Shown here: positions 5,801 through 62,974 of the stretch, piece by piece
How positions within the stretch are numbered: position 1 is the stretch's first letter
Layout of the letters: every line of letters starts with the position of its first letter
Origin: Hemiscyllium ocellatum
Lineage: Eukaryota
Reading direction: 5' to 3'
Assembly: GCF_020745735.1 (NCBI RefSeq)
Contig: NC_083427.1
Location: forward strand, 2,077,438-2,141,437
Length of the DNA stretch: 64,000 nt
Program-made: the position numbers and the translations under genes
The notes under the pieces: generated by a model
What the model was told of the DNA's origin: nothing
Database searches by the model: none
The model's input: the letters and a program-made list of their open reading frames with translations, nothing else

Positions 5801-6015
5801 CTACCAAGCCATCTTCCCGCCCATTCAATTTCTATGAGAAACCAAGCATCTTCAACAATAAATACACCGTTAAGTTATTGTAATGGCATGATCTCCACTC
5901 TAAGTGCTGAACCACTGAATATATATGATTTGATCTCCTTCTCAAGTTAAGATGTTCACGTAGGCGTTGGCTATTTTCTGTCTCTCCTATTGTTAACGGC
6001 TCAGCATGTCAAGGT

Positions 6016-6628
6016 GAAAGTGAGGACTGCAGATGCTGGAGATTAGAGTCGAGACTGTGGTGATGGAAAGGAATGGAAGATCAGGCAGTCTCCGAGCAGC
6101 TGGGGGATTGGCGTTTTGGCCAAAAATCCTTAATCAGGAATGAGACTGGGAGCCGAAGGGGTGAAAGATAAATGTCTGGGGGTGGTGCTGAGTTAACGTA
6201 ACTGAGAGTGCAACAGGTGGATGGAGGTGGGGGTAATGGCGAGAGGTCAGAGGGTAGAGTGGAACAGATAGTTGGGAAGGAAGTTGGGCAGGTAGGACAC
6301 CTCATCAGGGTAGCGCCGAGTTGGAAGGCTGGCTCTGGGATAGGTTGCTGGGTGGGGAAATTAGGAAACTGAGAAAATACATGTTGACACCATGGGGTTG
6401 GAAGGTCCCGAGGCGGAATTTGAGGCGTTCTTCCTCCAGGCGTCGTGTGGTTTGGGAGTTGCGATGGAGAATGGCCAGGACCTGCATGTCCTTGGTGTAG
6501 TGAGAGGGGGAATTGAAATGTTAGCATGTTAATCGAGTAGATAGAAAGATGGGTTGCAATCACTGTTGGAGTTGAGGGATTACAATTTTTTTTCTATTGT
6601 ATCATTGGAGTCTGCAGTCCTCACTTTC
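6016..6628 (-). mobile_element. Neptune-type Penelope-like element 3' fragment with 18-bp perfect inverted termini
   Basis: The minus ORF 6305-6487 (LHR..QTTRRLEEERLKFRLGTFQPHG) is the GIY-YIG C-terminus, homologous to 12440-12540. GAAAGTGAGGACTGCAGA (6016-6033) is the exact reverse complement of 6611-6628. Confidence 0.85.
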
Positions 6629-8209: not shown

Positions 8210-9033
8210 GACTGTGGCTTGTACTGTGTAACATGCGAATGCCCATTGTTGGTCACAAGGGTACGTTTCAGCAAAAAGCCAAACCTGACATCACATACAT
8301 AAAGACACTGATCACCATTTAGTGGTAGATATCTCAGTACTCTGGAAATATATTCTTGTAAACTCTGACCCTAATATCTGTCGATCAGGCCTCAGCACAA
8401 ATCTGGAGTATAACATGACTAAATATTCACACAGCAACATTTAATAAAGGATTCTCGACTTTATTCTTTCAATGCAGCAGATCAGGTGTCATGGCACACG
8501 AAAATGTTCAGCCATGTCTCAACCTCCTGCGCTTTATTTCATGATCTCAAGCCCAGAATCATCACGAAGTACCTGACAGTACACAGGTAGATTGCTATAA
8601 ACCCCTATTAACATTCAGTATTTACCATGTTGTCAGTTTGAAAGGCGACCTCACATTACTCGACTGTTTCACGCTATTCTTCATCATTTCAATTACTGTT
8701 GAATTTTCTTTGTACTGGTTTCTATTTGAAAGTAGCATAAATTTCTCTCTGCGTATTGCTCTCTACCGGTTTTTCTCGTGTCGACTCTTTGAATCTTTAC
8801 ACCAAATTATGCAATGCTGAGATTGAGATACCTTTTTCAACTATCTATGAGGATTCATCTCTCGTCATCTGTGCTGTTACGCTTCCATCCAGTCTTATGT
8901 CTTTTACCCACAGATATGTCGAATTTCTCTCTGAAATGTTGGAACTGTGGTAATACTGCAAGAATAAACTTCTCTTCATTCAGCAATTCGATGAATTGAT
9001 CTTTGGTAACTCGACTCGACACTGAGGCGTACA

Positions 9034-9034
<1 letters not shown>

Positions 9035-9108
<74 letters not shown>
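9035..9108. repeat. (CA)37 microsatellite
   Basis: Perfect dinucleotide run of 74 nt. Confidence 0.99.
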
Positions 9109-9110
<2 letters not shown>

Positions 9111-9924
9111 GATAGAGATGACATGGATTGACTCTGAATGATGCTTATGATGTCTCCTCCTGGAGATGGTCATTGCCTGACAAGTGGCAAGAATCTTGCT
9201 TGCTGCTTGTAGCCAGGACTGCATTCTATACAGGTCTTCTTGCATTTTGGACGCGGATTACTGGTGCTGAAAATTGTCGAGATTGTTACTTTGTCAAAAC
9301 AGTCAATTTTTCTTTGCAAGACAGTTGGGGAATAGCAGTCGCGTCTGTATTATTTTTCAGTGTGTTAATATTGAAAACACTGCAGTTGTTTACATTCATA
9401 TAACGTATTAGTCGTTACTTTTTTGCTACTTACATGAAAGACAATTGTTAACACGCTGAATGTTAACGACCAAGTCCACTGTCGCCCCGTCCCACAACCT
9501 TGTCTGCACCTTATCCATCAGAAAGTGATCATTCTGTTCACCAGCTGCATGCATGTAATGACACCAGCAGGTGGAAGTAAAGTATAAATTGTGCATCGCA
9601 GCCAAAGATTTTCCATCACTTATTATAAGTTGGCGGGGGGAAACGTTCTGGGAGCTGATCACAATCCTGGGAAGCTGGGAGCATGCCAGACAAAACTGTC
9701 ATACGTAGCCTTGCACACAGAAAATCCTCTCGATTTATGCCCAATAAGGACAAAACATTGCTCCTTCATGTTAAGAATATTTTTCAAATGTACCAGGAGT
9801 TTTGTTTAGTTCTCAACCCGTAACACACTGCTGAAAGGAGCATAATATCAAGAAATACTTTTTCAACGATCATTTTATTATGTTGCAGCGATGGTTAAGG
9901 TCTGGAAAAGCAATGGTGGAATTT

Positions 9925-11084: not shown

Positions 11085-12696
11085 GCTCTTGCCCCACTGA
11101 ACTCATCTCTGCATACCTCGACACAGTCCTGTCCCCCTTCGTCCAAGAACTCCCCACCGACGTTCGGGGCACCACCCACGCCCTCCACCTTCTCCATGAT
11201 TTTCGCTTCCCCGTCCCCAATGCTTTATCTTCACCATGGACATCCAGTCCCTGCACCCTTCCATCCCCCATCACGAAGGACTCAAAGCCCTCTGCTTATT
11301 CCTTTCCCAAAGTACCAACCAGTACCTTTCCACTGATCCCCTCCTCCGACTGACTGAACTGTCCTCACTCTGAACAACTTCTCTTTGCAATCCTCCCACT
11401 TCCTCCAAACCAAAGGAGTAGCCATGGAGACCCGCATGGGCCTCAGTTATGCCTGCCTCTTCGTAGGATATGTGGAACAGTCCATCATCCGCAGCTACAC
11501 TCTCGGCACTGCCTCGTGCTCCCACGAGGAGGTTGAACAGTTCATCCACTTTACCAACACCTTCAACCCCGACCTCAAATTTACCTGGACCATCTCAGAC
11601 TCCTCCCTCCCCTTCCTAGACCTCTCCATTTCTATATCGGGCGACCGAATCAACACGGACATTTACTATAAATCGACCAACTCCCACAGCTACCTAGACT
11701 ACACCTCCTCCCATCCTGCCCGCTGTGAAAAACGCCATCCCGTATTACCAATTCCTACGTCTGCTCTGCATCTGCTCCCAGGAGGACCGGTTCCAATGCC
11801 GAACAACCCAGATGTCCTCCTTCTTCAAAGACCGCAATTTCCTCCTACACGTGATCGACGATGCTCTCCACCGCATCTCCTCCATTTCCTCTTCCTCCAC
11901 CTTTGACCCCCGATGCTCCAATCGCCACGAGGACAGAACCCCACTGGTCCTCACCTACCACACCACCAAACTCCATATACGTCGTATCATCCATCGTCAT
12001 TTCTGCCACCTTCAAACGGACACCACTGCCAGGGATATATTTCCCTCCCGTCCCCTCCCAGCGTTCCGAAAAGACCACTCCCTCCGTGACTCCCTTGTCA
12101 GGTCCACACCCCCCACCCCCCATCAACTCAACCTCCGCTCCTGGCACTTTCCCCTGCAACTGCAAGAAATGCAAAACCTGCGCCCACACCTTCCCCCTTA
12201 CTTCCCTCCAAGGCCCCAAGGGATCCTTCCATATCCGCCACAAATTCACCTGCGCCTCCACACACATCATTTACTGCATCCACTGCAACCAATGTGGCCT
12301 CCTCTACATTGGGGAGACTGGCCGCCTACTTGCGGAACTTTTCAGAGAACACCTCTGGGACACCCGGATCAACCAACCCAACCACCCCGTGGCTCAACAC
12401 TTCAACTCCCCCTCCCACTCCACCAAGGACATGCAGGTCTTTGGACTCCTCCATCGCCAGACTACAGCAACACGATGGCTGGGGGAAGAGCGCCTCATCT
12501 TCTACTTAGGAACCCTCGTACCACAATGGATGAATTCAGATTTCTCTAGTTTCCTCATTTCACCTCCCCCCACCTTGTTTCAGTCCCAAACCTCGAAATC
12601 AGCACCACCTTCCTAACCTGCAATCTTCTTCCTGACCTCTCCGCCCACACCCCCACTTGCAGCCTATCACCATCATTTTAACCTCCTTCCATCTAT
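11085..12696 (+). mobile_element. Neptune-type Penelope-like element, degenerate RT + Cys-rich linker + GIY-YIG (5' part, interrupted by a nested insertion)
   Basis: GVAMETRMGLSYACLFVG (RT; the catalytic YIDD segment is deleted), FPCNCKKCKTC linker, and IIYCIHCNQCGLLYIGETGR (GIY-YIG) in ORFs 11385-11906 and 11861-12616. The start is approximate. Confidence 0.88.
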
Positions 12697-14575
12697 AAAA
12701 TCTGATTGAAGATTTGTAGCTCGGGTATCCGTTGTTGTGGTTCTGCTCGCCGAGCTGGAAGTTTTTGCTGCAAACGTTTCGTTCCCTGGCTAGGGAACAT
12801 CATCAGTGCTGTTGGAGCCTCGTGTGATGCGCTGCTTTGATGTTTCTTTCGGTATTTATATTGGTTTGTTCTTGCCGCTTCCGGTGTCAGTTTCAGCTGC
12901 AGTGATTTGTATGTGGGGTCCAGATCGATGTGTCTGTTGATGGATGTTCTTGCCGTTTCCGGGTGTCAGTTTCAGCTGTAGTGGTTTGCATATGGTGTCC
13001 AGGTCAATGTGTCTGTTGATGGAGTTTGGGGATGAATGCCATGCTTCTAGGAATTCTCTGGCTGTTCTCTGTCTGGCTTGTCCTATGATAGTGGTGTTTT
13101 CCCAGTCAAATTCATGTTGCTGGTTGTCTGAGTGTATGGCTACTAGAGATAGCTGGTCGTGTCGTTTTGTGGCTAGCTGATGTTCATGGATGCGGATTGT
13201 TAGCTGTCTTCCTGTTTGTCCTATATAGTGTTTTGTGCAGTCCTTGCATGGTATTTTGTAAACTACGTTAGTTTGGCTCATGCTGGGTATTGGGTCCTTT
13301 GTTCTAGTGAGTTGTTGTCTGAGCGTGGATGTTGGCTTGTGTGCTGTTATGAGTCCTAAGGGTCGCAGTAGTCTGGCTGTCAGTTCTGAGACGCTCCCGA
13401 CGTATGGTAGAGTGGCTAGTCCTTTTGGTTGTGGCATGTCCTCGTTCCTCGGTCTATCTCTTAGGCATCTGGTGATAAAGTTGCGTGGGTATCCGTTTTT
13501 GGCGAATACCTTGTATAGATGTTCTTCTTCCTCTTTTTGCAGTTCTGGTGTACTGCAGTGATTTGTGGCCCTTTTGAATAGTGTCCTGATGCAGCTTCGT
13601 TTGTGTGTGTTGGGGTGGTTACTTTCATAGTTTAAGACTTGGTCTGTGTGTGTTGGTTTCCTGTGTACCCTTGTGGTGAATTCTCCGTTGGGTGTTCTCT
13701 CTAGTAACACGTCTAGGAATGGGAGTTGGCTATCCTTTTTCTGTTCTCGTGTGAATCGGATTTTTGTGGCGTTGATGATTCGGTGTGTTTTTTCGATATC
13801 TGTGTTTTTGATGATTACAAAGGTGTCATCAACATATCTGATCCAGAGTTTGGGTTGGATTTGTGGTATGGCTGTATGTTCTAACCTTTGCATAACTGCC
13901 TCTGCTATGAGTCCCGAGATTGGTGATCCCATGGGTGTTCCGTTGATTTGTTCGTATATCTGATTGTTGAATGTAAAGTGTGCGGTGAGGCACAGGTCCA
14001 GTAGTTTAAGTATGCCGTCCTTGTTGATAGGTTCGGCCTCCTGTGTTCTGTTATGTATGTCCAGTAGGTTGGCTATTGTTTCTCTGGCTAGGGTTTTGTC
14101 AATTGAAGTGGACAGTGCCGTCACGTCGAATGATACCATGGTTTCTTCTTTGTCTATGTGTGTATTCCTGATGACGTCCAAGAATTCCTGTGTTGATTGT
14201 ATGGAGTGTTTGGATCCGCTGACTAGGTGTTTCAGTTTTTGTTGTAGTTCTTTGGCCAGTTTGTATGCTGGTGTGCCTGGTAGTGATACTATGGGTCTGA
14301 ATGGGATGTCTGGTTTGTGTACTTTGGGTAGTCCATAGAATCTGGGGGTGTTGTTGCTTTCAGGTTTCATTCTTTGCTGGTCCGCTTTGGTTATCTGTCC
14401 GTTTTTTTGTAGATTCCTTAGTGTGTTGTTTATTCTATTGGTGAGTTGTGGTGTGGGGTCGGAATCCTTCATTTGGTAGGTGTTGGTGTCTGCGAGTAGT
14501 TGTTGTGCTTTACTGATGTTGTCTGATTTATCTAGGATGACCGTCATACTGCCTTTATCTGCCGGTAGTATGATT
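12697..14575 (-). mobile_element. Poseidon-type Penelope element, left (antisense) arm with a continuous RT + GIY-YIG reading frame
   Basis: The 578-aa ORF 12856-14592 contains ADKG, FYGLPKVHK, GTPMGSPIS, RYVDD and VVYKIPCKDCTKHYIGQTGR. It is 5'-truncated; the first residues of the ORF-track call come from the junction. Confidence 0.96.
12770..12809 (-). ncRNA. Minimal type I hammerhead ribozyme motif in the PLE terminal repeat (left-arm copy)
   Basis: Exact reverse complement of 16235-16274. Confidence 0.7.
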
Positions 14576-16020
14576 CCGACCCCACACCACAACTCACCAA
14601 TAGAATAAACAACACACTAAGGAATCTACAAAAAAACGGACAGATAACCAAAGCGGACCAGCAAAGAATGAAACCTGAAAGCAACAACACCCCCAGATTC
14701 TATGGACTACCCAAAGTACACAAACCAGACATCCCATTCAGACCCATAGTATCACTACCAGGGACACCAGCATACAAACTGGCCAAAGAACTACAACAAA
14801 AACTGAAACACCTAGTCAGCGGATCCAAACACTCCATACAATCAACACAGGAATTCTTGGACGTCATCAGGAATACACACATAGACAAAGAAGAAACCAT
14901 GGTATCATCCGATGTGACGGCACTGTTCACTTCAATTGACAAAACCCTAGCCAGAGAAACAATAGCCAAACTACTGGACATACATAACAGAACACAGGAG
15001 GCCGAACCTATCAACATGGACGGCATACTTAAACTACTGGACCTGTGCCTCACCACACACTTTACATTCAACAATCAGATATACGAACAAATCAACGGAA
15101 CACCCATGGGATCACCAATCTCGGGACTCATAGCAGAGGCAGTTATTCAAAGGTTAGAGCATACAGCCATACCACAAATCCAACCCAAACTCTGGATCAG
15201 ATATGTTGATGACACCTTTGTAATCATCAAAAACACAGATATAGAAAAACACACCGAATCATCAACGCCACACTCACAGGAATCCGATTCACACGAGAAG
15301 AGGAAAAGGATAGCCAACTCCCATTCCTAGACGTGTTACTAGAGAGAACACCCAACGGAGAATTCACCACAAGGGTACACAGGAAACCAACACACACAGA
15401 CCAAGTCTTAAACTATGAAAGTAACCACCCCAACACACACAAACGAAGCTGCATCAGGACACTATTCAAAAGGGCCACAACACACTGCAGTACAGCAGAA
15501 CTGCAAAAAGAGGAAGAGGAACATCTATACAAGGTATTCGCCAGAAACGGATACCCACGCAACTTTATCACCAGATGCCTAAGAGATAGACCGAGGAGCG
15601 AAGTCATGCCACAACCAAAAGGACTAGCCACTCTACCATACGTCGGGAGCGTCTCAGAACTGACAGCCAGACTACTGCGACCCTTAGGACTCATAACAGC
15701 ACACAAGCCAACATCCACGCTCAGACAACAACTCACTAGAACAAAGGACCCAATACCCAGCATGAGCCAAACTAACGTAGTTTACAAAATACCATGCAAG
15801 GACTGCACAAAACACTATATAGGACAAACAGGAAGACAGCTAACAATCCGCATCCATGAACATCAGCTAGCCACAAAACGACACGACCAGCTATCTCTAG
15901 TAGCCATACACTCAGACAACCAGCAACATGAATTTGACTGGGAAAACACCACTATCATAGGACAAGCCAGACAGAGAACAGCCAGAGAATTCCTAGAAGC
16001 ATGGCATTCATCCCCAAACT

Positions 16021-16174
16021 CCATCAACAGACACATTGACCTGGACACCATATACAAACCACTACAGCTGAAACTGACACCCGGAAACAGCAAGAACATC
16101 CATCAACAGACACATCGACCTGGACCCCACATACAAATCACTGCAGCTGAAACTGACACCCGGAAGCGGCAAGA
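16021..16174 (+). repeat. 79-bp-period tandem duplication at the Penelope ORF 3' end (present in both arms)
   Basis: ccatcaacagacaca...caaga starts at 16021 and again at 16100. The mirror copy is at about 12870-13023. Confidence 0.85.
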
Positions 16175-16234
16175 GCAAACCAATATAAATACCGAAAGAA
16201 ACATCAAAGCAGCGCTTCACACGAGGCTCCAACA

Positions 16235-16274
16235 GCACTGATGATGTTCCCTAGCCAGGGAACGAAACGTTTGC
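16235..16274 (+). ncRNA. Minimal type I hammerhead ribozyme motif in the PLE terminal repeat (right-arm copy)
   Basis: GCA-CTGATGA-T-GTTCCC(tagcca)GGGAAC-GAAAC-GTT-TGC: catalytic core, perfect 6-bp stem II, palindromic AACGTT stem III, and 3-bp stem I (GCA/TGC). PLE pLTRs are known to carry minimal hammerheads. Confidence 0.7.
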
Positions 16275-16309
16275 AGCAAAAACTTCCAGCTCGGCGAGCA
16301 GAACCACAA

Positions 16310-16485
16310 CTCCTTCCATCTATCGCATTTCAAACGCCCCTCCCCCAAGTCCCTCGTCCCTACCTTTACCCTAGCTTGCTTGGCATACTCTCCTCATTCC
16401 TGAAGAAGGGCTCATGCCCGAAACTTCGGTTCTCCTGTTCCTTGGATACTGCATGACCTGCTGCGCTTTTCCAGCAACACAGTCT
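16310..16485 (+). mobile_element. Neptune-type PLE 3' terminus (continuation of 11085-12696) with a mutated hammerhead
   Basis: The sequence resumes after the duplicated CTCCTTCCATCTAT. CTGAAGA-A-GGGC(tcat)GCCC-GAAAC-TTC lies at 16400-16427; other copies in the window have GTC at the cleavage site. Confidence 0.85.
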
Positions 16486-19400
16486 CAGCATAATTCCGGT
16501 CTTCCCATTATCTTGCATCAAACTCAAGTATCGAACCCAAATATTGATGTGAAAATCCTTTGAGCATCATTCTCAAAGATTACATTTGTCTCTCCTTTCT
16601 CATTGCACTGTGGCATTCAAAGCATAGCGTATACCAATTCTCATCCCATTGCAGAGTTTCGGTTCGATGCTACCATTCCTTTTCCCAGAAGACTGAATCA
16701 TGATTGTACTAATTGCAGAACCTCACTCTGTCTTATAACTCTGCAGGAATGTTCACCTTTATTTCGCAATGAAACTTGTTTCTGCTCTCCTAACATAACA
16801 GCGTTTCCCTCTTACTTTTGTCCCACTTTTCTCTGCTTCACTTCCAACAAAAATGAACCAAAACACAATTGGATCCAAAATACAATACTGCCTCACATTC
16901 CCTTAAAGAATATAAATTCAAGTCATTGTTGTTTCGTGTGAAAACTGAAGTTGAAAATGTTAACAAGGAAAAAAAAAAGTAATGTTGCCACTTTGGCAAG
17001 CAGAATAGTGAAAAGAAAGAGTGACAATCGCAGTTAAAATACACAAAATGTGGTCGATATAAAACATAACACAAAAGGATGAGGAACCGAACAAACAACA
17101 GGTCTCACTAGCAGAAACAAAACAGAAATTTGTTCCGGGGTGGCACTACTGTACAACTTGGAAAGAAATTGAAACTGGGCTTCGCTTGTCTGGAGTTTCG
17201 ATGAATGACAAGTGATCTGATTGAAACTTAAAAAAATACTTGAAGAATTCGGCAGGATCAGTGCAGGTGATGTGTTCTCTCTCACCACCCACACCTCCCA
17301 GTTGTGGAGTTCAGAATTTGCAAATAAGGGACTTGAGGACAAAATGAGAGGAATCATTTTCTCCATTCTATGGTGGTGAACTGTTGGAAATCAGTACTGC
17401 AGATGGAAAAGGAGTATTTAAATTAAGCATTGATGGATTTCTGATTGCCAGTCGTATTACACGTTATTGGAACACTCCGGCTTTAAGAATTTTATCAGGC
17501 ACGATCCTATTAAATTGCAGAGAAGCTTTAGTGGGTGAACGATTCTCGATCTAGCGAATTTTTGTTTTCGCAAAAATTGAACAATTTATAAATGTGAGTA
17601 ATATTTGTCGTCAAATAATACACTGCCTGCTTTGCCAGACCTTAATCTATTGACTGGTAGATCCATGTGGGCTACAACCAGCTGACCAATTTGTTGTTTT
17701 ATCTGCCCAGTGAAGTGCAGACGTCATTGTAAACATGAGAAAACAGTGGACTGATTCCAGTGAAGTACAGATAAACCACTCGTTTCCTTGGAAAGTATGC
17801 CTGGAGCATTGAATATTAAGGAGTACGGAGGTAAAACCTTCTGAGATTGCAGATGACGATGCAATGCGGATTGTAGGAGATGTTAGTTTGTAGATGATTG
17901 AACCAGAATGTCCAAGAGTGAAGATTTGTACGGGGAAGTGTATGGGGCTATGTGAGTACTGGTACCATCCAGTTGGAGATAATGGAAATGATGACTTATG
18001 ATGACTCCGAAGAAGATACCAGTGTGTGGAATGTGAGGACGATTGAAACGTTATGGGTGTTGTGGGCGGAATGAGGAGGTGTGAGGAATCAGCTATGAAC
18101 ACCTACTTTCTATCAGTAGTTGTCCCTGATCGACAACTATATCATTCCCTTTATCCTTTGATTATGTCACCTTTGATCTCTAACTGCATGCACTCATTAA
18201 CACGCACAGCACTGTTTCAGCATAAATGCCTTCATGTTTCCACCTTGCATTTGAAACATTATGATTTTTTCTCCTCCCATTATTACAGCACACCGACTGA
18301 GGTTGTGCAGCACTTTCTGTTTCTTCAGTTAAATATGGTTTTTTTCCTGATCTTTTAGCCAATTCAATGACAATTCTGGCGATGTCTGTTTCGCTTCATG
18401 AACTTCAATAACAAAGTGGGTATCAATGTAATTCTTCACGTATTTAGGGTTATCAAGAAAATGCTGCAAAAATGCACAATAACGTCTGGTCTCAGCAAAA
18501 GTATTTCGAGTTTCACAAAAACAGTCAACAACACTTTGCTTCATTATAGACAGTTGGAAGAACATCTGAATGTATGAGGAATTACGTTGAGAACCAATTT
18601 AAGATGAGTTGGGTTCGGTCTCTGGCACACGTGTGTGCTGGAAACCATGCATAACACCAGACAGAAGGCTATTCATTGCAGACATAAAGATCATCTGTAT
18701 GCATTCAATGCGTTCTAATTCGACAAAAGTGGTGGCTTGTTCGTTGCTGAGGGCGATGATCTCAATGATCTGGGTCAACCGGTCTGATTTGAAATGTAGC
18801 AAAGTCTTGTCTTTAATAGTCAATTGGTATCAATTTGTGCCTTTTCTGCATTTGACAACAAAGCCTTGCCAAGCAATCACATTCTCCTTGCATTCATTAT
18901 TGGCTTTTTCCTCGGACTTGGGATTGCGATATTTCCTTATGTCCTTTAATAAAATTTACCTGTGTTTCTTTGGATCTAAGATTCTGTCATACCATATGAA
19001 TAAAAGCAAGTGTGTAAAACATTTGGAGATCTGCACTTCTTTTCTGCACTCTGCTCGATTCTCAACTATATTTAGTGTTTTAATTTTTACACTTCCTTTT
19101 GTATTTTAATTTATTGTGCAAATCTTTTGCTTTCTGGCGGTTACCAGATTTGATAGCCATCCCTTTCATAGTTCTGGTGTTGAGTTGAACAATATCGTCT
19201 TAGAACGACTTTTGTTTTGCACTTCATGTTATTTCTCGAAATGTTTCAGTCTACTTCTCTCAGGTAGGACTTGTTTTCAGTTCACTGATGCTAGCCCTGT
19301 TACATTAAGTATCTTAAGGCTCGAGATTTTAATTCATATTCTTTAGGGCACTTTAGTAATAGATGATATTATGATGAGGGTTTCCTAAATTCATTTCAAC

Positions 19401-25928: not shown

Positions 25929-26136
25929 AAAAGTGAGAACTGAAGACAGTGGACAGTCAGAATCGAAATGTTTGACGCTGGAATATCGCAACTATCCAGG
26001 CAGCATCCATGCAGGTGAATAATTGATGTTGCAGCCATTAGCTATTCCTCAGTCTTGATGAAGGACTGGTGGTCGAAACCCCTAATATTCTACTTCTCGG
26101 ATGCTGCCTGATCTTCTGTACTTTTCCAGCGCCAAA
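25929..26136. mobile_element. Head-to-head pair of Neptune-type PLE termini
   Basis: CAGGCAGCATCC (25997-26008) is the exact inverse of GGATGCTGCCTG (26099-26110). A degenerate ttgatgaag..gaaac lies between them. Confidence 0.65.
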
Positions 26137-27281
26137 CCCAATAATTTTCAATAACTATTTTAAAACCAATATAAGTTTGATCACCAGCTCCAAACTGCAT
26201 CCCTGTCATAATTCAACCACTTGCCCTGCCTTCTCTGCCAAGAATCGGATAACTTTGGTTCCTCCTCGAGTATGTTAATCCACATACTTTTAAGAAATAT
26301 TTATTGAACTCACTTAGCAAGACATTCATACAATAGATTTCATAGTTCATGTTTGGAAATTTAAAATACCCCATTCCAACCCTATTATTTGCCTAGATAG
26401 CTGAGATCTCCTGGAAAGTAATGCTTCTCAATTTTTTGCTGTTAATTGCAGACATAGAGTACAATCCTAACAAGAAGACAAACCATTTCTTATTTTTCAG
26501 TTCCAGTCAAAGTCATTCATTTGATGTTATCCTGGAATGTCCTCCCCAAATACAGCTGTAATGTTTTCCTCAATCATAAATGCCACTCGGCCTCCTCTCT
26601 TGACGACCAGCGATTCTTCCCATACCACAGTAAGTTAAGCTACCAGTACAGCCATTTCTGAGCCACAGTTCTGTAATAACATTAATATTCCTGTCCCTAC
26701 CTCCAAATCATGATCTCAGTTCATCAGACTTCGCATTCAGGCCTCTTGCATAAGGACAAATGAAGTTTAATTTACTAGTCTTCCCTCGTTTTCTACCTTG
26801 GTCTTGCCTAATTTCAATATTTTAGTTGCTTCTGTTCTCAGCTGCACCAGTCTCAGAACTCTGTCTTCGCTCACTATCTCTTTTAATTCCATCAAGTTGC
26901 CCCACATCCTAACAAGTATAAACCCTCGGGAGTGGCACTGGCATATCTCCCGCCAAGATATTGTCTCTGTTCCAATTCAGATAAAATGCCTTCCTTCTTA
27001 CACAGGCCATTCTCCCACAGAGCGATCCTTTTGTTTAAAAAATACGAAGCCTGCCATCTGCAACAACTTCTCAGTCACGCATTCCTTTACCCTATTCTTC
27101 GATTCCTACTGTCACTAGCACATGTTACCAGAAACAATTCAGATATTACTCCTCTTGTGGATTTACTTTTAAAACTTTTGCCTAGGTTCCTTAAATTCTC
27201 ATGTGGCTTTCTCTTCCTATGTCGTTGAGTTCAGCGACCTCTTGCTGATCCCTCTCCCCTTTGAGAATTTTCTGCACCATC

Positions 27282-52399: not shown

Positions 52400-54560
52400 T
52401 GTTTCCAACTTGTTATTTCATCACCACCTCTGTCGTTATTTCATTAGCTCTGCCATTTTTAACATTGTCGTCAAATACTACTCACTGTAATGCATCCACT
52501 TCTCTCTGAAGTTTCCAATATTTCATTGAAACTTCTCTGCTTTCCAACATCGCAGGGAATACTGCTTATTTTATAAATATTGCGTGTCTGAAGAATGTCT
52601 ATTGATTTGATTTAAAATAAGACCCCTAGGATGTCGGCATCACCAACTGAGGCAGCATTTATTTTCACACCAGCAAATTTAGGATATAAATGCACTCTAC
52701 GCTATAAAATATGGCATAAACTTTGCTGCATTCTTCAACATAATCTAACAATTTTATTGCAGTTCTTGGCAAATTAGACCAAGCAGTTCCTCCAACCCGA
52801 CATGCATTATCATAAAATTCGTGACAATGTCCTGCTGCTCCATAGGACTAATTAACAGTGTTTCCTTGGACGTCTCAAATATTACTGGGAAATTGTACAC
52901 TGACGTCTGCTGATTTTTAGCATTTGTTATGAACATGATAATGTAATATCTACATATATATGCAACATTCCAGTAAAAGTTCAGCCAGGAGGCTGCAAAA
53001 TCATTCCTCAAAAGATAATCGGTTCATTCCATGGAATTGTCAGGTAACCCGTTTCTGAACATCCTCTGATGCAATTACATCTCCTGTGGATGAGATGAAC
53101 ATAATGACTCAGTACATTCTAGGGGTAAGCTTGCATGTGTCTGGTTTATCGAAAATAAAATGACTTCTGTAGATTGTGTCGAGAGTGTGGTGATGGAAAA
53201 GCACAGGTAGTCTGGCAGCATCCGACGATTCTACTGCTTCTCGGATGCTGCCTGACTTGCTGTGCTTTTCCAGCACCAGACTGTCGACTCTGAATTCCAG
53301 CAGCTGCACTCCCCACTTTCTCTTTCTGTACATTCGTATCCAGATTCCTTTTTGATAACTGATATCATTGCTTTAATTTTCTGAGTTATTTGCTGCCCAT
53401 CTGTGCTAATCTCAAGATATCCATCCATTCAGAAATCGTGGTCCGTCTGCACCTCAGAGTTTTACAATCTGTCATCATTTTTATTATTGTTGTCTGTTCC
53501 TCTTACCAAATGGTCTTCTTGTTCACCAAGCTCCACAATCATTTTTCGTATCATTATTCACACCTGTCATGATAATCTTTTAATTTCCTTGTGCCCTCTG
53601 ATGACTTAATTTCATTTCACATTTTTGAAAGTTCAGTAAATTTGGCTAACGGAGCATGGCCGTCTACATCGAAGGCATGTATTGCAAACATGATTTGCCC
53701 GCATTTATTTTCTGTATGACCGAAGTTCACTTTGTCAATTACCTCCTTTTCAAAATAATTGCAGGGACTCGTATTCTCTGATTTAATCTCTGGTGAGCTT
53801 CCTATCAAAAGCTGATGATTCAATAGTTATTAATTTTCATTTCTTTCATTTCCTCAAATTTTACTATTCTGTCTAATTTTCTGGCTTACGTCTGGTTGTC
53901 CACAATCACATCCATTTTGCTTAGTATTAATATTATCTTAAACCACAGATAACATTCCGAAACTTAGAATTTTCCTTCATCTTTAGCATGTATCTTTTTA
54001 TGTGATCTGAAACGTTTCCTTACACGTCTGCCACTATATCATGAATGAATTCTCCCCTATAATTATTTTCCAATTCACTTCAGCCAGCTCTGCTTTCGTG
54101 CCCTCATAGTATCCTATGTTAAACAACAGTTTTCTCTCGCACAGTTTGAATGTGAATGCAATCATGTTAACGTTGCTAATCACAAGAGAGGCCTTTACAA
54201 TGTAGTAATGATTTAATCCTACCTATTTCACCATTGCAGGAGGTTCAAAACATGTCGAAAACATGTGATTTGAACGAACTATTCCAAAATCATTTTAGGA
54301 GCTCCATACGGAGGATGTCTTTGCACATCTTACTTTCACAGTTATTTTACAGATAATACCTCCCATATGATTGTCTGATAATAAACATTATCAGACAAGC
54401 TCTTATAACGTTTACATCTATGCCCTCCCCAATCGTATAATTACACAATGTTGATCCGAACACCACTCCCAAAATTAACTGCTTGAGCTGTAATTTTTCA
54501 ACTTTACTTAAAACCCTTTCCACGGACTGCCTTTCTGAAATGGTGGACAATCATCTGGCT
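52400..54560 (-). mobile_element. Degenerate CR1-type LINE fragments in the J-C1 intron
   Basis: Minus-strand LLIGSSPEIKS..KEVIDKVN and gcaataaaattgtttagattatg (RT-region) similarity; heavily decayed. Confidence 0.5.
53176..53323. mobile_element. Head-to-head Neptune-type PLE-terminus palindrome with an 11-bp TSD
   Basis: GGCAGCATCCGA (53214-53225) and TCGGATGCTGCC (53241-53252) are perfect inverses. Flanks TTCTGTAGATT (53165-53175) and TTCTGTACATT (53324-53334). Confidence 0.75.
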
Positions 54561-60845: not shown

Positions 60846-61363
60846 GTAAGAAAGTTGAACAATCTCTCAAACTCATATTAATAACGATAATCACTTGCAT
60901 AATAAGTGTTGGACTAGAGGGAACATAATTATGTTGTCGTATTGCTGAGGATGAAGCATTCTTGAAATACTTGCATTGCGTGATGTCAATGGCAATTTGT
61001 AATCCAGAGTAATGTTACAGCAAAAGTGATTGGGAATGACCCAGGTACCTAAAGCAGCTATTCACAAATCTATAGTTGTTTACAATATCTGAAATTATTT
61101 CTCTCTGCTCTGTGTAAGTCTTTATCTCACTCGCAAAAGCTGATGGCAATAAGTAGAAACCTTGGAAGAAGACAGAGGAAAAGAGGCAGTGATATTGACA
61201 CTGTGATGAAAGCAACTGAATGAGAGATGTTGTGCAATCCCCAGGATTGACGATTTTAAACAAAGTTCCTTTTTTTCTCGATATTAATTCTCTTTATAAA
61301 ACAAGGTAGTTCCACGCTTTAATTAATTTACCAAGTCAATCCAGGGCATCAAAAATACTTTTG

Positions 61364-61533
61364 GGAATGTGTGGTGTTGGAAACGCACAGCAAATGATGC
61401 AGCAATCGAGGAGCAGGAGAATCGACGTTTCCATCAGGAACTCTTTCTCGGATTCTGAATGACCTGCTGAAGTTTTCCAGCACCGCACACTCTCAACTCT
61501 GATCTCCAACATGTGCAGCCGTCACTTTCTTCT
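61364..61533. mobile_element. Head-to-head Neptune-type PLE-terminus palindrome with an imperfect ~16-bp TSD (C1-C2 intron)
   Basis: GTGTGGTGTTGGAAA (61369-61383) versus TTTCCAGCACCGCAC (61474-61488) is a 13/15 inverted match. Flanks ATCAAAAATACTTTTG and ATCAAAAAATACTCTG. Confidence 0.72.
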
Positions 61534-62371
61534 ATCAAAAAATACTCTGTCAATGCCGAGACTGCATCCGAAAGGAAACAACTTCAACAATGAGTAATTT
61601 TACTGCTCATGCTAAGGATTTAATGTTTGCTGCTGCTATGTGCAACCAAGCATTTTTAGAAAAGATGAATTGGAAGGATGCTGTTCAGAGAAGCTAAGGG
61701 GAGAGACAGGAGTCTGGTGAAACAGAGACATAAATCTGTTTTTGGATGGGATACAACAAGCATACAAATATATGCTTCATTGAAACCTTCCTGATATTGA
61801 TCGCCAGAAAGACAAACAAATGTTTTTTTTCGGACAGTACATGCAATGACGTAATCAAGGATAATAATCTCAATGATATTATGTGCTGAAAATTCATCAA
61901 CCCTCATGATGTGGTAAATTTTCTCTGTCTCTCCATCTTTATCTTGCTATCTCACGGTCTTGTACTACTGCCAGGCTCATTTCGTCTCTGTCTGTTGGCT
62001 TGAGTCGCTCTGCTTATTCTGATTACTTTCATTCTGTAACTAGATCTTTCGCTTCACTGGTCATCTCTCTATATGTCTCGCTTTCTCTGCTTCTCCCCTT
62101 CTCAAAAATATTTATTCTTTCACGCTCCTGTTTCTGCAGATTTTAATAATTCTTTATGCATCATTGACCGTAGCTGCTTACGCTTCTCTTCTTCTTTACG
62201 CATATTGGTATTTATTCCTCCATTTTGTCTTCTTTCCTTTGGTACTGTCTGACCATCTTCCGCTCTTTCTGTCTGTCATTTCCAGCCTGTTATCTCCAGA
62301 TCCCATTCTCAAAGTTTATGCCTTTATGCATATCTATCTGGCAATCTGAGTTCACCTGTTCCTCCGTCTTA

Positions 62372-62580
62372 GAAATGTGCTGTTTGAAAAGCACAGCAGG
62401 TCATGCAGCATCAAAAGAGCAGGAGAAACGACGTTTCGGGCAAAAACCCTTCTTCCTGAAGAAGGGCTTCTGCCTGCAACGTCGATTCTCCTGCTCCTTT
62501 GACGCTGCCTGACTTGCTGCGCTTTTCCTGCAACGCATTATTAAGCTCTGATCTCCAGCATCTGGAGGCCTCACTTTCCC
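62372..62580. mobile_element. Head-to-head Neptune-type PLE-terminus palindrome with a 17-bp TSD (C1-C2 intron)
   Basis: Central stem CCCTTCTTC-ct-GAAGAAGGG (62447-62466) with ~80-bp imperfect arms. Flanks CCTGTTCCTCCGTCTTA (62355-62371) and CCTGTTCCT-acgt-CCGTCTTA (62581-62601). Confidence 0.82.
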
Positions 62581-62974
62581 CCTGTTCCTACGTCCGTCTT
62601 ACTGCATATATTTATCTGCATTTATAATTAGTTTGCATTTTGAACGAGTTTGCATTTTCTTCTCTGCTGATTATTTCTCTATTTATTTCTGTCCTGCTTA
62701 CTAAATGGATCCACATCAATTCTTTCATTCCACAAAGTGCGTCTCTTGCTTTCCTTTTTGTTTATTTTGTACTTAACCGGCTTATACAAATTATAAATCA
62801 AATCAACAAACGTGAAAACCAGCAATGGCACTTCAAATTCTATATTGCTGCATCTGTGACAGAGACATTCGCAATTTATCGTCCCATCTCTTGTCACTGA
62901 TTTGGCATTCTTGTTGCAATCCTGGTTACATGGAACATGGAAAAGAATTTGAAACTCTGATTTCTCACCAACAG

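What the first reader, a model, noticed from the sequence alone, without database searches (positions are those of the whole stretch)
12683..16323. 3.6-kb head-to-head Penelope palindrome with a clean 14-bp TSD, nested inside a different PLE
Seen: CTCCTTCCATCTAT at 12683-12696 and 16310-16323 flanks a 3.6-kb insert. The insert is two inverted copies of the same 3' 1.73 kb of a Poseidon-type element (12734-14466 versus 14572-16310), with a 105-bp loop and a 4-nt GATT microhomology at the junction (14572-14575). The left arm starts at the element's 3' end; the right arm ends 37 nt short of it. The host Neptune-type PLE resumes seamlessly after the second TSD. Established: PLEs often carry short inverted pLTR pieces, whereas L1 twin priming gives non-overlapping halves. 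Inference: both strands of one staggered cut each primed reverse transcription from the RNA 3' region, and the two long cDNAs were joined by microhomology (bilateral TPRT).
Basis: partly seen in the sequence, partly recalled or inferred. Interest (0 to 1): 0.8.

Follow-up and report, generated by a model that had tools for sequence, protein, structure and literature searches.

The report
Head-to-head Penelope-like retroelement insertion
This is a real 3.6-kb insertion made of two inverted copies of one Penelope-like retrotransposon, but its layout is the published insertion signature of this element class, so it is a clean example and not a new phenomenon.

Summary
Two inverted copies of the 3' 1.7-1.9 kb of a Penelope/Poseidon-type element (12697-14575 minus strand, 14572-16310 plus strand) meet head-to-head. 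They are about 98% alike. An exact 14-bp duplication flanks them. They lie in the 3' untranslated part of a decayed Neptune-like element.

The 105-nt "loop" is extra 5' sequence of the left copy. The GATT microhomology is real. The 37 nt present only on the left end is genuine element sequence.

All of this matches the published PLE architecture: an inverted 5'-truncated copy, duplications around the whole unit, and a 30-40-nt "tail" at one end only (Arkhipova 2013; Craig 2021). A purified Poseidon protein cleaves and extends both DNA strands and starts reverse transcription at two sites that span the tail (Frangieh 2024).

Copy-back of a single cDNA remains a live rival, because the two arms are nearly equal in length. 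This scan reached the same verdict on seven similar insertions elsewhere in this genome. No read spanning the structure could be obtained. Interest is low.

The parts
12683..12696 (.). Left copy of the 14-bp target-site duplication, CTCCTTCCATCTAT
   Evidence: Uninterrupted host-family paralogues carry it once.
12697..12733 (-). 37-nt 'tail': extra 3'-terminal element sequence present only on the left copy
   Evidence: It continues the next-copy ORF start as QRIPELQIFNQI. This matches the N-terminus of the Chiloscyllium relative P0007, PQQRAPELQIFSQTL. Its length lies in the published 30-40 nt range (PMC8557442, PMC11167929).
12734..14466 (-). Left arm: antisense copy of the element's 3' 1.73 kb (RT, GIY-YIG EN, hammerhead, start of the next ORF)
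   Evidence: A 578-aa open frame at 12856-14592 (minus strand) has an RVT_1 hit.
12773..12806 (-). Minimal hammerhead motif of the left copy
   Evidence: It is the reverse complement of 16238-16271, read directly.
14467..14571 (-). 105-nt spacer: the left copy reaches 105 nt further 5' than the right copy
   Evidence: The left-arm ORF runs through it as ILPADKGSMTVILDKSDNISKAQQLLADTNTYQ. This is the conserved PLE RT N-terminal motif seen in relatives.
14572..14575 (.). GATT: 4-nt microhomology at the junction of the two copies
   Evidence: Related-species contigs follow the left copy to 14575 before diverging. Relatives read IIILPADKG at this point. The chance of 4 nt or more at one random junction is about 0.016 (my calculation).
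14572..16310 (+). Right arm: sense copy of the same 1.74 kb. It ends at the 'no-tail' position and is out of frame relative to the left arm at three indel sites.
16238..16271 (+). Minimal hammerhead motif: CUGAUGA, U, 7-bp helix II, GAAA, CG, UU. The next ORF's ATG lies at 16241, inside the motif.
   Evidence: Read directly. It meets the PLE min-HHR features listed in PMC4209133. Rfam gave no hit.
16310..16323 (.). Right copy of the 14-bp target-site duplication
11100..12682 (+). Host: decayed, 5'-truncated Neptune-like PLE (RT remnants, Cys-rich linker CNCKKCKTC, GIY-YIG). Its frame stops at about 12616. The left boundary is approximate.
   Evidence: A sub-threshold GIY-YIG hit lies at residues 135-165 of ORF 11861-12616.
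16324..16488 (+). Host PLE 3' region resuming after the insert, with its own minimal hammerhead at 16400-16431
   Evidence: Family depth drops after 16488, and other copies continue there with a tail sequence. Similar modules occur elsewhere in the window.

Best explanation
This is one retrotransposition event of a Penelope/Poseidon-type element into the 3' untranslated region of an older Neptune-like element. The element's GIY-YIG endonuclease made a staggered double-strand cut that left 14-nt 3' overhangs. Each 3'-OH then primed reverse transcription inside the element RNA, near the start of the next tandem ORF. One strand started at the distal start site (ORF +107, giving the arm with the 37-nt tail). 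The other started at the proximal start site (ORF +70, giving the arm without the tail). Both cDNAs grew to about 1.8 kb. Their 3' ends paired over 4 nt (GATT/AATC), and each was extended on the other. Fill-in of the overhangs gave the 14-bp duplication. What is shown here is the anatomy, the single event, the genuineness of the tail and the microhomology. Both-strand cleavage and extension and the two start sites are shown in vitro by others for a related element. It is inferred that both arms here were copied from RNA and that the join was made by microhomology annealing.
For: - **Anatomy:**
- **Single event:** one exact 14-bp duplication surrounds the whole unit, and a paralogous empty site exists.
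- **The tail is element sequence:** the region after the EN reading frame holds a minimal hammerhead, and the next ORF's ATG sits inside it. That ORF reads MMFPSQGTKRLQQKLPARRAEPQQRIPELQIFNQI through the tail. It matches the N-terminal region (from about residue 19) of a shark relative.
- **End positions:** the two ends lie at ORF +70 and +107. In the Anolis Poseidon element PAc, RT starts at two adjacent internal sites about 111-118 nt into the ORF, and the tail is the sequence between them. The purified PAc protein cleaves and extends both strands (PMC11167929).
- **Published architecture:** an inverted 5'-truncated copy, a tail at one end only, and duplications around the whole unit (PMC8557442; PMC3846280).
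- **Other cases in this window:** two Neptune-like mini-insertions show the same plan. The first is 61360-61537, with a 9-bp duplication and a 41-nt tail on one side. The second is 62371-62580, with a duplication of about 17 bp and a 35-nt tail on one side.
- **Same source for both arms:** at seven arm-difference sites with visible read data, six show a rare allele in one arm (three in each arm) and the family majority base in the other. The seventh is polymorphic in the family. This fits private changes from one source sequence.
Against: - The two copies differ in length by only 105 nt at the head. If two cDNAs were truncated independently over about 3 kb, I estimate roughly a 5-10% chance of this.
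- All five inverted PLE insertions in this window have small spacers of 0-105 nt. This points to coupled synthesis or to copy-back.
- No long read spans the locus.
- The start-site positions for this shark family are inferred from one locus and one protein relative, not from many insertions.
- Frangieh et al. do not themselves connect both-strand extension with inverted insertions.
Confidence: 0.55

Rival explanations
1. Copy-back (snap-back) of a single cDNA. One strand primes at the distal site and the cDNA reaches 1.88 kb. Its 3' end (GATT) then folds back onto AATC 105 nt behind (14463-14466) and copies itself, or the RT switches onto its own product. About 37 nt before the end, synthesis jumps to the other target end.
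For: - Near-equal arms and a short loop follow automatically from this model.
- The other four inverted insertions in this window, all Neptune-like, have spacers of 0-21 nt; the main Poseidon locus has 105 nt.
- A tail on exactly one side, seen in 3 of 3 clean cases here, is expected if the copied arm always stops short.
- Arkhipova 2013 argued for self-priming from palindromes at inverted junctions (PMC3846280).
Against: - The copied arm would have to stop at the same 30-40-nt offset that in vitro work assigns to a second RT start site, which is used on both strands (PMC11167929).
- The classic PLE layout, a long copy plus a short inverted 3'-terminal piece (PMC8557442, PMC3846280), cannot arise by simple fold-back.
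- Copy-back has not been shown for a PLE RT.
Confidence: 0.28
2. Two sequential insertions, the second landing at the 5' end of the first, or a later DNA-level inverted duplication of a single copy.
For: PLE endonucleases often cut within PLE sequence (PMC11167929). Nested PLEs are common in this window.
Against: A single exact 14-bp duplication brackets the entire structure, and no second duplication lies at the inner junction. The host family's uninterrupted sequence has the 14-mer once. A later inverted duplication would not recreate a direct duplication of the target at the far end.
Confidence: 0.04
3. Assembly artefact, such as a fold-back chimeric long read or a mis-join of two paralogous copies.
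For: No read or contig spanning 12.6-16.4 kb could be examined. PLE inverted structures are known to trouble assemblies (PMC8557442).
Against: - The arms differ at 27 positions and three indels, so they are not one strand read twice.
- The flanks form a precise target duplication within a continuous host element.
- The ends carry the family-specific tail/no-tail signature.
Confidence: 0.05

Closest known systems
Canonical EN+ Penelope-like element insertion architecture (Evgen'ev & Arkhipova 2005; Arkhipova 2006; Arkhipova et al. 2013, PMC3846280; Craig et al. 2021, PMC8557442)
   Same: Head-to-head inverted 5'-truncated copy. A variable-length target duplication around the whole unit (8-10 bp in the rotifer cases, 14 bp here). 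A 30-40-nt tail at one end only. A hammerhead motif in the terminal repeat region. Microhomology at 5' junctions.
   Different: Here both copies are 5'-truncated at nearly the same point. The result is an almost symmetric 3.6-kb palindrome with no full-length ORF copy and no direct pLTR, rather than a full unit with a short inverted pLTR.
PAc, the Poseidon element of Anolis carolinensis, characterised in vitro (Frangieh et al. 2024, PMC11167929)
   Same: The ORF start lies inside the hammerhead at the start of stem II. The insertion 3' ends lie about 70-110 nt into the next ORF copy. Two end positions are separated by a tail-length interval. Both DNA strands serve as primers, which matches the outward-facing 3' ends on both sides.
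   Different: PAc prefers to cut at 5'-ATT-3' in AT-rich DNA. The cut sites inferred here (after ...CATCTAT on top and ...GGAAGGAG on the bottom strand) are not obviously of that type. The in vitro work does not show how the two cDNAs are resolved. No biochemistry exists for the shark element.
L1 twin priming (Ostertag & Kazazian 2001; from my own knowledge, not read here)
   Same: The second target strand primes reverse transcription, and the two cDNAs are joined by microhomology, giving an inverted structure within one duplication.
   Different: Twin priming uses one RNA with an internal second priming site. It gives non-overlapping inverted and direct halves. Here the arms overlap completely and both begin at dedicated 3' start sites.

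Membership tests
Penelope-like elements (EN+) | Reverse transcriptase domain of PLE type | tested here: met
   RVT_1 hit, E 4.7e-8, on the 578-aa left-arm ORF. The closest proteins carry RVT_1 plus HTH_animal and DUF8422, and read ...IIILPADKG....
Penelope-like elements (EN+) | [quoted passage not shown] | tested here: inconclusive
   The Pfam GIY-YIG hit is below threshold (E 0.035). The motif is plain on reading: VVYKIPCKDCTKHYIGQTGR...IHEH.
Penelope-like elements (EN+) | Minimal hammerhead ribozyme motif in the terminal repeat | tested here: met
   Positions 16238-16271 read CUGAUGA-U-GUUCCCU/AGGGAAC-GAAA-CG-UU. This has the extra nucleotide after A9, the G10.1-C11.1 pair, a long helix II and a palindromic 15.2-16.2, as listed in PMC4209133. 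Rfam models did not detect it, as expected for motifs that lack helix III. Cleavage activity was not tested.
Penelope-like elements (EN+) | Insertion signature: target duplication, inverted 5'-truncated copy, one-sided 30-40-nt tail | tested here: met
   Published description.
Penelope/Poseidon clade (the insert) | No CX2-5CxxC Zn-finger-like linker upstream of GIY-YIG (PMC8557442) | tested here: met
   The sequence before the GIY motif is ...LRQQLTRTKDPIPSMSQTNVVY, with no cysteines. No phylogeny was run.
Neptune/Nematis-type clade (the host element) | Cys-rich CX2-5CxxC linker upstream of GIY-YIG | tested here: met
   The host ORF 11861-12616 reads ...PCNCKKCKTCAHTF... upstream of IIYCIHCNQCGLLYIGETGR. 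Neptune versus Nematis was not resolved, and no phylogeny was run.
Two-strand (bilateral) TPRT as shown for PAc | Both target strands cleaved and extended from RNA at two fixed internal start sites | not testable with these tools
   Only the end positions (+70 and +107) and the outward 3' ends are visible. Whether the second arm was copied from RNA or from the first cDNA cannot be read from one locus.

The most novel reading that the evidence does not exclude
The two arms may not be independent. In this window all five inverted PLE insertions have nearly equal arms, with spacers of 0-105 nt for arms of 60-1730 nt. All three well-preserved ones carry the tail on exactly one side. In vitro, either start site is used on either strand. 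This pattern would point to an obligatorily asymmetric, coupled step that has not been described. One possibility is a dimeric RNP whose two nascent cDNAs switch onto each other. Another is copy-back of one cDNA. Such young shark palindromes could serve as natural records for working out the unresolved second half of PLE integration.
Probability: 0.3. Interest if true: 0.5.

Novelty: already known. Interest (0 to 1): 0.22.

Why it matters
How PLEs complete integration after first-strand synthesis is still open. Frangieh 2024 calls the later steps 'yet to be validated experimentally'. A clean, fairly young insertion helps here, because both arms are long and both outer ends and the inner junction can be read to the base. 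It is a useful natural example of what the two-strand model predicts. It also gives concrete numbers for a genome-wide census: a 37-nt tail, 4-nt microhomology and a 105-nt length difference. On its own it adds no new principle. One practical point is that transcription through such a palindrome would give a 1.7-kb double-stranded RNA hairpin against the family, a possible source of silencing small RNAs. That idea is speculative and was not tested.

Tried and rejected
- **Rfam scan of 9-20 kb at E up to 1:** no hammerhead hit. The motif had to be read by hand against the published min-HHR criteria.
- **Read support:** Neither the spanning-read test nor an orthologous or allelic empty-site test could be done. 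Only paralogous empty sites of the host family were seen.
- **Other genomic copies from related sharks:** fetching via the look-up of encoding contigs (P0007, P0001, P0008) returned gene tables but no DNA, because the files are too large. The family's canonical 3' ends could not be surveyed.
- **Other copies in the window:** there is no second copy of this Poseidon family in the window.
- **Pfam:** GIY-YIG hits were below threshold for both elements.
- **Rejected readings:** two sequential insertions, a later DNA-level inverted duplication, and an assembly fold-back. Reasons are given under rival explanations.
- **TSD search at 53.2 kb and 26.0 kb:** only an 8-mer of doubtful meaning at one and nothing at the other. 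Both were left as old and unclear.
Full report
**1. The observation**

- CTCCTTCCATCTAT stands at 12683-12696 and again at 16310-16323.
- Between the two lie inverted arms, 12734-14466 and 14572-16310, separated by 105 nt.
- BLAST of one arm against the reverse complement of the other gives 98.1% identity over 1739 columns.
- A global alignment gives 27 mismatches (16 transitions, 11 transversions, 4 in CpG context) and three indel events of 1, 6 and 1 nt.
- The left copy has 37 further nt (12697-12733) between the duplication and the start of the shared sequence.
- The base at 16310 is ambiguous between element and duplication.
- The window has no N and no second copy of this family.

**2. 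What the insert is**

The left arm carries an uninterrupted 578-aa frame (12856-14592, minus strand) with an RVT_1 match. Its C-terminal part reads VVYKIPCKDCTKHYIGQTGR...IHEH. This is a GIY-YIG core with two cysteines between GIY and YIG. The Pfam hit is only sub-threshold. The right arm is out of frame relative to the left at the three indel sites.

The closest database proteins are unnamed proteins of carpet sharks: Chiloscyllium punctatum, Hemiscyllium ocellatum, Stegostoma and Rhincodon, at 59-85% identity. After them come flatworm PLE proteins at 41-56%. The genome is therefore probably an orectolobiform shark.

No cysteine-rich linker precedes the GIY motif. By the criterion in Craig et al. 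2021, this places the insert with Penelope/Poseidon.

**3. The 3' terminal region**

Downstream of the EN reading frame lies CUGAUGA-U-GUUCCCU-AGCC-AGGGAAC-GAAA-CG-UU (16238-16271). It shows the features Cervera and de la Peña list for PLE minimal hammerheads:
- an extra nucleotide after A9;
- a G10.1-C11.1 pair;
- a long helix II;
- a palindromic 15.2-16.2.

Rfam did not detect it. That fits motifs that lack helix III.

An ATG at 16241 sits inside the CUGAUGA box. It opens a frame reading MMFPSQGTKRLQQKLPARRAEPQ, which continues through the 37-nt extension as QRIPELQIFNQI. The Chiloscyllium relative P0007 reads ...SPRQGTKRLQDKFPARRTEPQQRAPELQIFSQTL... from about residue 19.

Two conclusions follow. 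The extension is genuine element sequence, not filler. The insertion's 3' ends also lie inside the start of the next tandem ORF copy, at +70 (right arm) and +107 (left arm).

**4. The centre**

The 105-nt spacer continues the left copy's frame as ILPADKGSMTVILDKSDNISKAQ.... It is simply extra 5' sequence of the left copy.

Contigs from a related species follow the left copy through 14575 and then continue ATGTTCTTATCATTTC.... In the element's sense this translates as NDKNIIILPADKG, the same string seen in related PLE proteins. GATT therefore belongs to both copies, which makes it a 4-nt microhomology. I calculate the chance of 4 nt or more at one random junction as about 0.016.

**5. The host and the target site**

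The flanks belong to a decayed Neptune-like PLE.
- RT remnants start at about 11.1 kb.
- A CNCKKCKTC linker precedes IIYCIHCNQCGLLYIGETGR.
- The frame stops near 12616.
- The element has its own minimal hammerhead at 16400-16431.

The insert sits about 70 nt after that stop.

Reads confirm the target site through paralogues. One contig of the source-sample run joins 12657 to 16312 through a diverged version of the intervening host bases. Contigs of another species read TCACCTTAAC directly before 16310. The 14-mer is therefore single in uninterrupted host copies and was duplicated by this insertion. This also argues against an assembly artefact, as do the 27 differences and three indels between the arms.

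**6. Comparison with the literature**

- **Craig et al. 2021.** They state that PLE insertions are highly 5'-truncated. An inverted 5'-truncated copy often lies adjacent at the 5' end. A 30-40-bp tail is often found, typically at only one end of the insertion unit.
- **Arkhipova et al. 2013.** They describe units flanked by 8-10-bp duplications. One inverted pLTR is 37 bp shorter than the others. A 31-bp tail occurs on one inverted pLTR. Microhomology occurs at 5' junctions. Head-to-head is the most frequent inverted arrangement.
- **Frangieh et al. 2024.** Purified Poseidon protein from Anolis cleaves and extends both top and bottom strands, unlike R2 and L1. Reverse transcription starts at two adjacent internal RNA sites about 111-118 nt into the ORF. 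The tail is the sequence between those sites, and the ORF begins at stem II of the hammerhead.

Every feature of this locus maps onto these descriptions. The paper does not itself tie both-strand extension to inverted insertions. That link is a short inference, not a published statement.

**7. Recurrence**

The same window holds four small head-to-head Neptune-like insertions. Two are well preserved:
- 61360-61537, with the duplication AAAAATACT and a 41-nt tail on the right only;
- 62371-62580, with a duplication of about 17 nt containing a 4-nt indel, and a 35-nt tail on the right only.

Earlier notes of this scan report many more in this genome. One follow-up on seven tail/no-tail insertions reached the same verdict. 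I treated those notes as leads. I verified only the cited 2024 paper and the two in-window cases.

**8. Mechanism**

My preferred account is two-strand target-primed reverse transcription. A staggered cut leaves 14-nt 3' overhangs. One strand starts at +107 and the other at +70. Both cDNAs reach about 1.8 kb. Their 3' ends anneal over GATT/AATC and are extended on each other.

Seven arm-difference sites have visible read data. At six, one arm has a rare allele and the other the family majority base, three cases in each arm. The seventh is polymorphic in the family. This fits private changes from one source sequence and rules out two different subfamilies.

The main rival is copy-back of a single cDNA. 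It explains the near-equal arms and the one-sided tail without extra assumptions. Under independent truncation I estimate a 5-10% chance of arms this similar in length. All five inverted insertions here have small spacers.

Against copy-back:
- the copied arm would have to stop at exactly the offset that biochemistry assigns to a second start site;
- simple fold-back cannot produce the classic layout of a long copy plus a short inverted 3' piece.

A coupled dimeric complex whose two nascent cDNAs switch onto each other would reconcile both sets of facts, but that is speculation. I put two-strand priming at 0.55, copy-back at 0.28, and sequential insertion or artefact at under 0.1 together.

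**9. Verdict**

The structure is an ordinary, well-preserved instance of a known insertion signature. Its remaining value is as one data point for a census that could resolve how PLE integration is completed.

Noticed in passing
window 61351-61546 and 62353-62601: Two small head-to-head Neptune-like PLE insertions lie about 1 kb apart, with arms of about 60-95 nt. Each has a target duplication (9 bp, and about 17 bp with a 4-nt indel). Each has a 35-41-nt tail on the right side only, of the form CTCTGATCTCCAGCATCTG.AG.CCTCACTTTC.
   Followed up: partly
window 53164-53303 and 25970-26137: Two older Neptune-like mini-palindromes, with arms of about 60-80 nt and spacers of 15 and 4 nt. Neither has a convincing target duplication.
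   Followed up: partly
window 12400-16600, runs X5-X14: Nine other organisms (coded B-J) hold about a third of the 31-mers of this stretch. Two of them, B and C, were laid, and their contigs match parts of the Poseidon arm with 0-1 differences over about 120-140 nt. The family is therefore shared almost unchanged among several species. This means either slow evolution in related sharks or recent spread. It was not resolved.
   Followed up: no
window 16238-16243: In the right arm, the stop codon TGA of the long frame (16239-16241), the CUGAUGA box of the hammerhead and the next ORF's ATG (16241-16243) overlap within six bases. The left arm is in a different frame here because of a 1-nt indel upstream (12885/16159).
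   Followed up: no
window 8855-9245: A (CA)n/(TG)n microsatellite lies about 2 kb upstream of the host PLE.
   Followed up: no
window 6010-6520 (minus strand): Another 5'-truncated Neptune-like copy. An EN remnant at 6308-6520 is 63% identical in protein to the host EN. A 3' module lies at 6010-6144.
   Followed up: no
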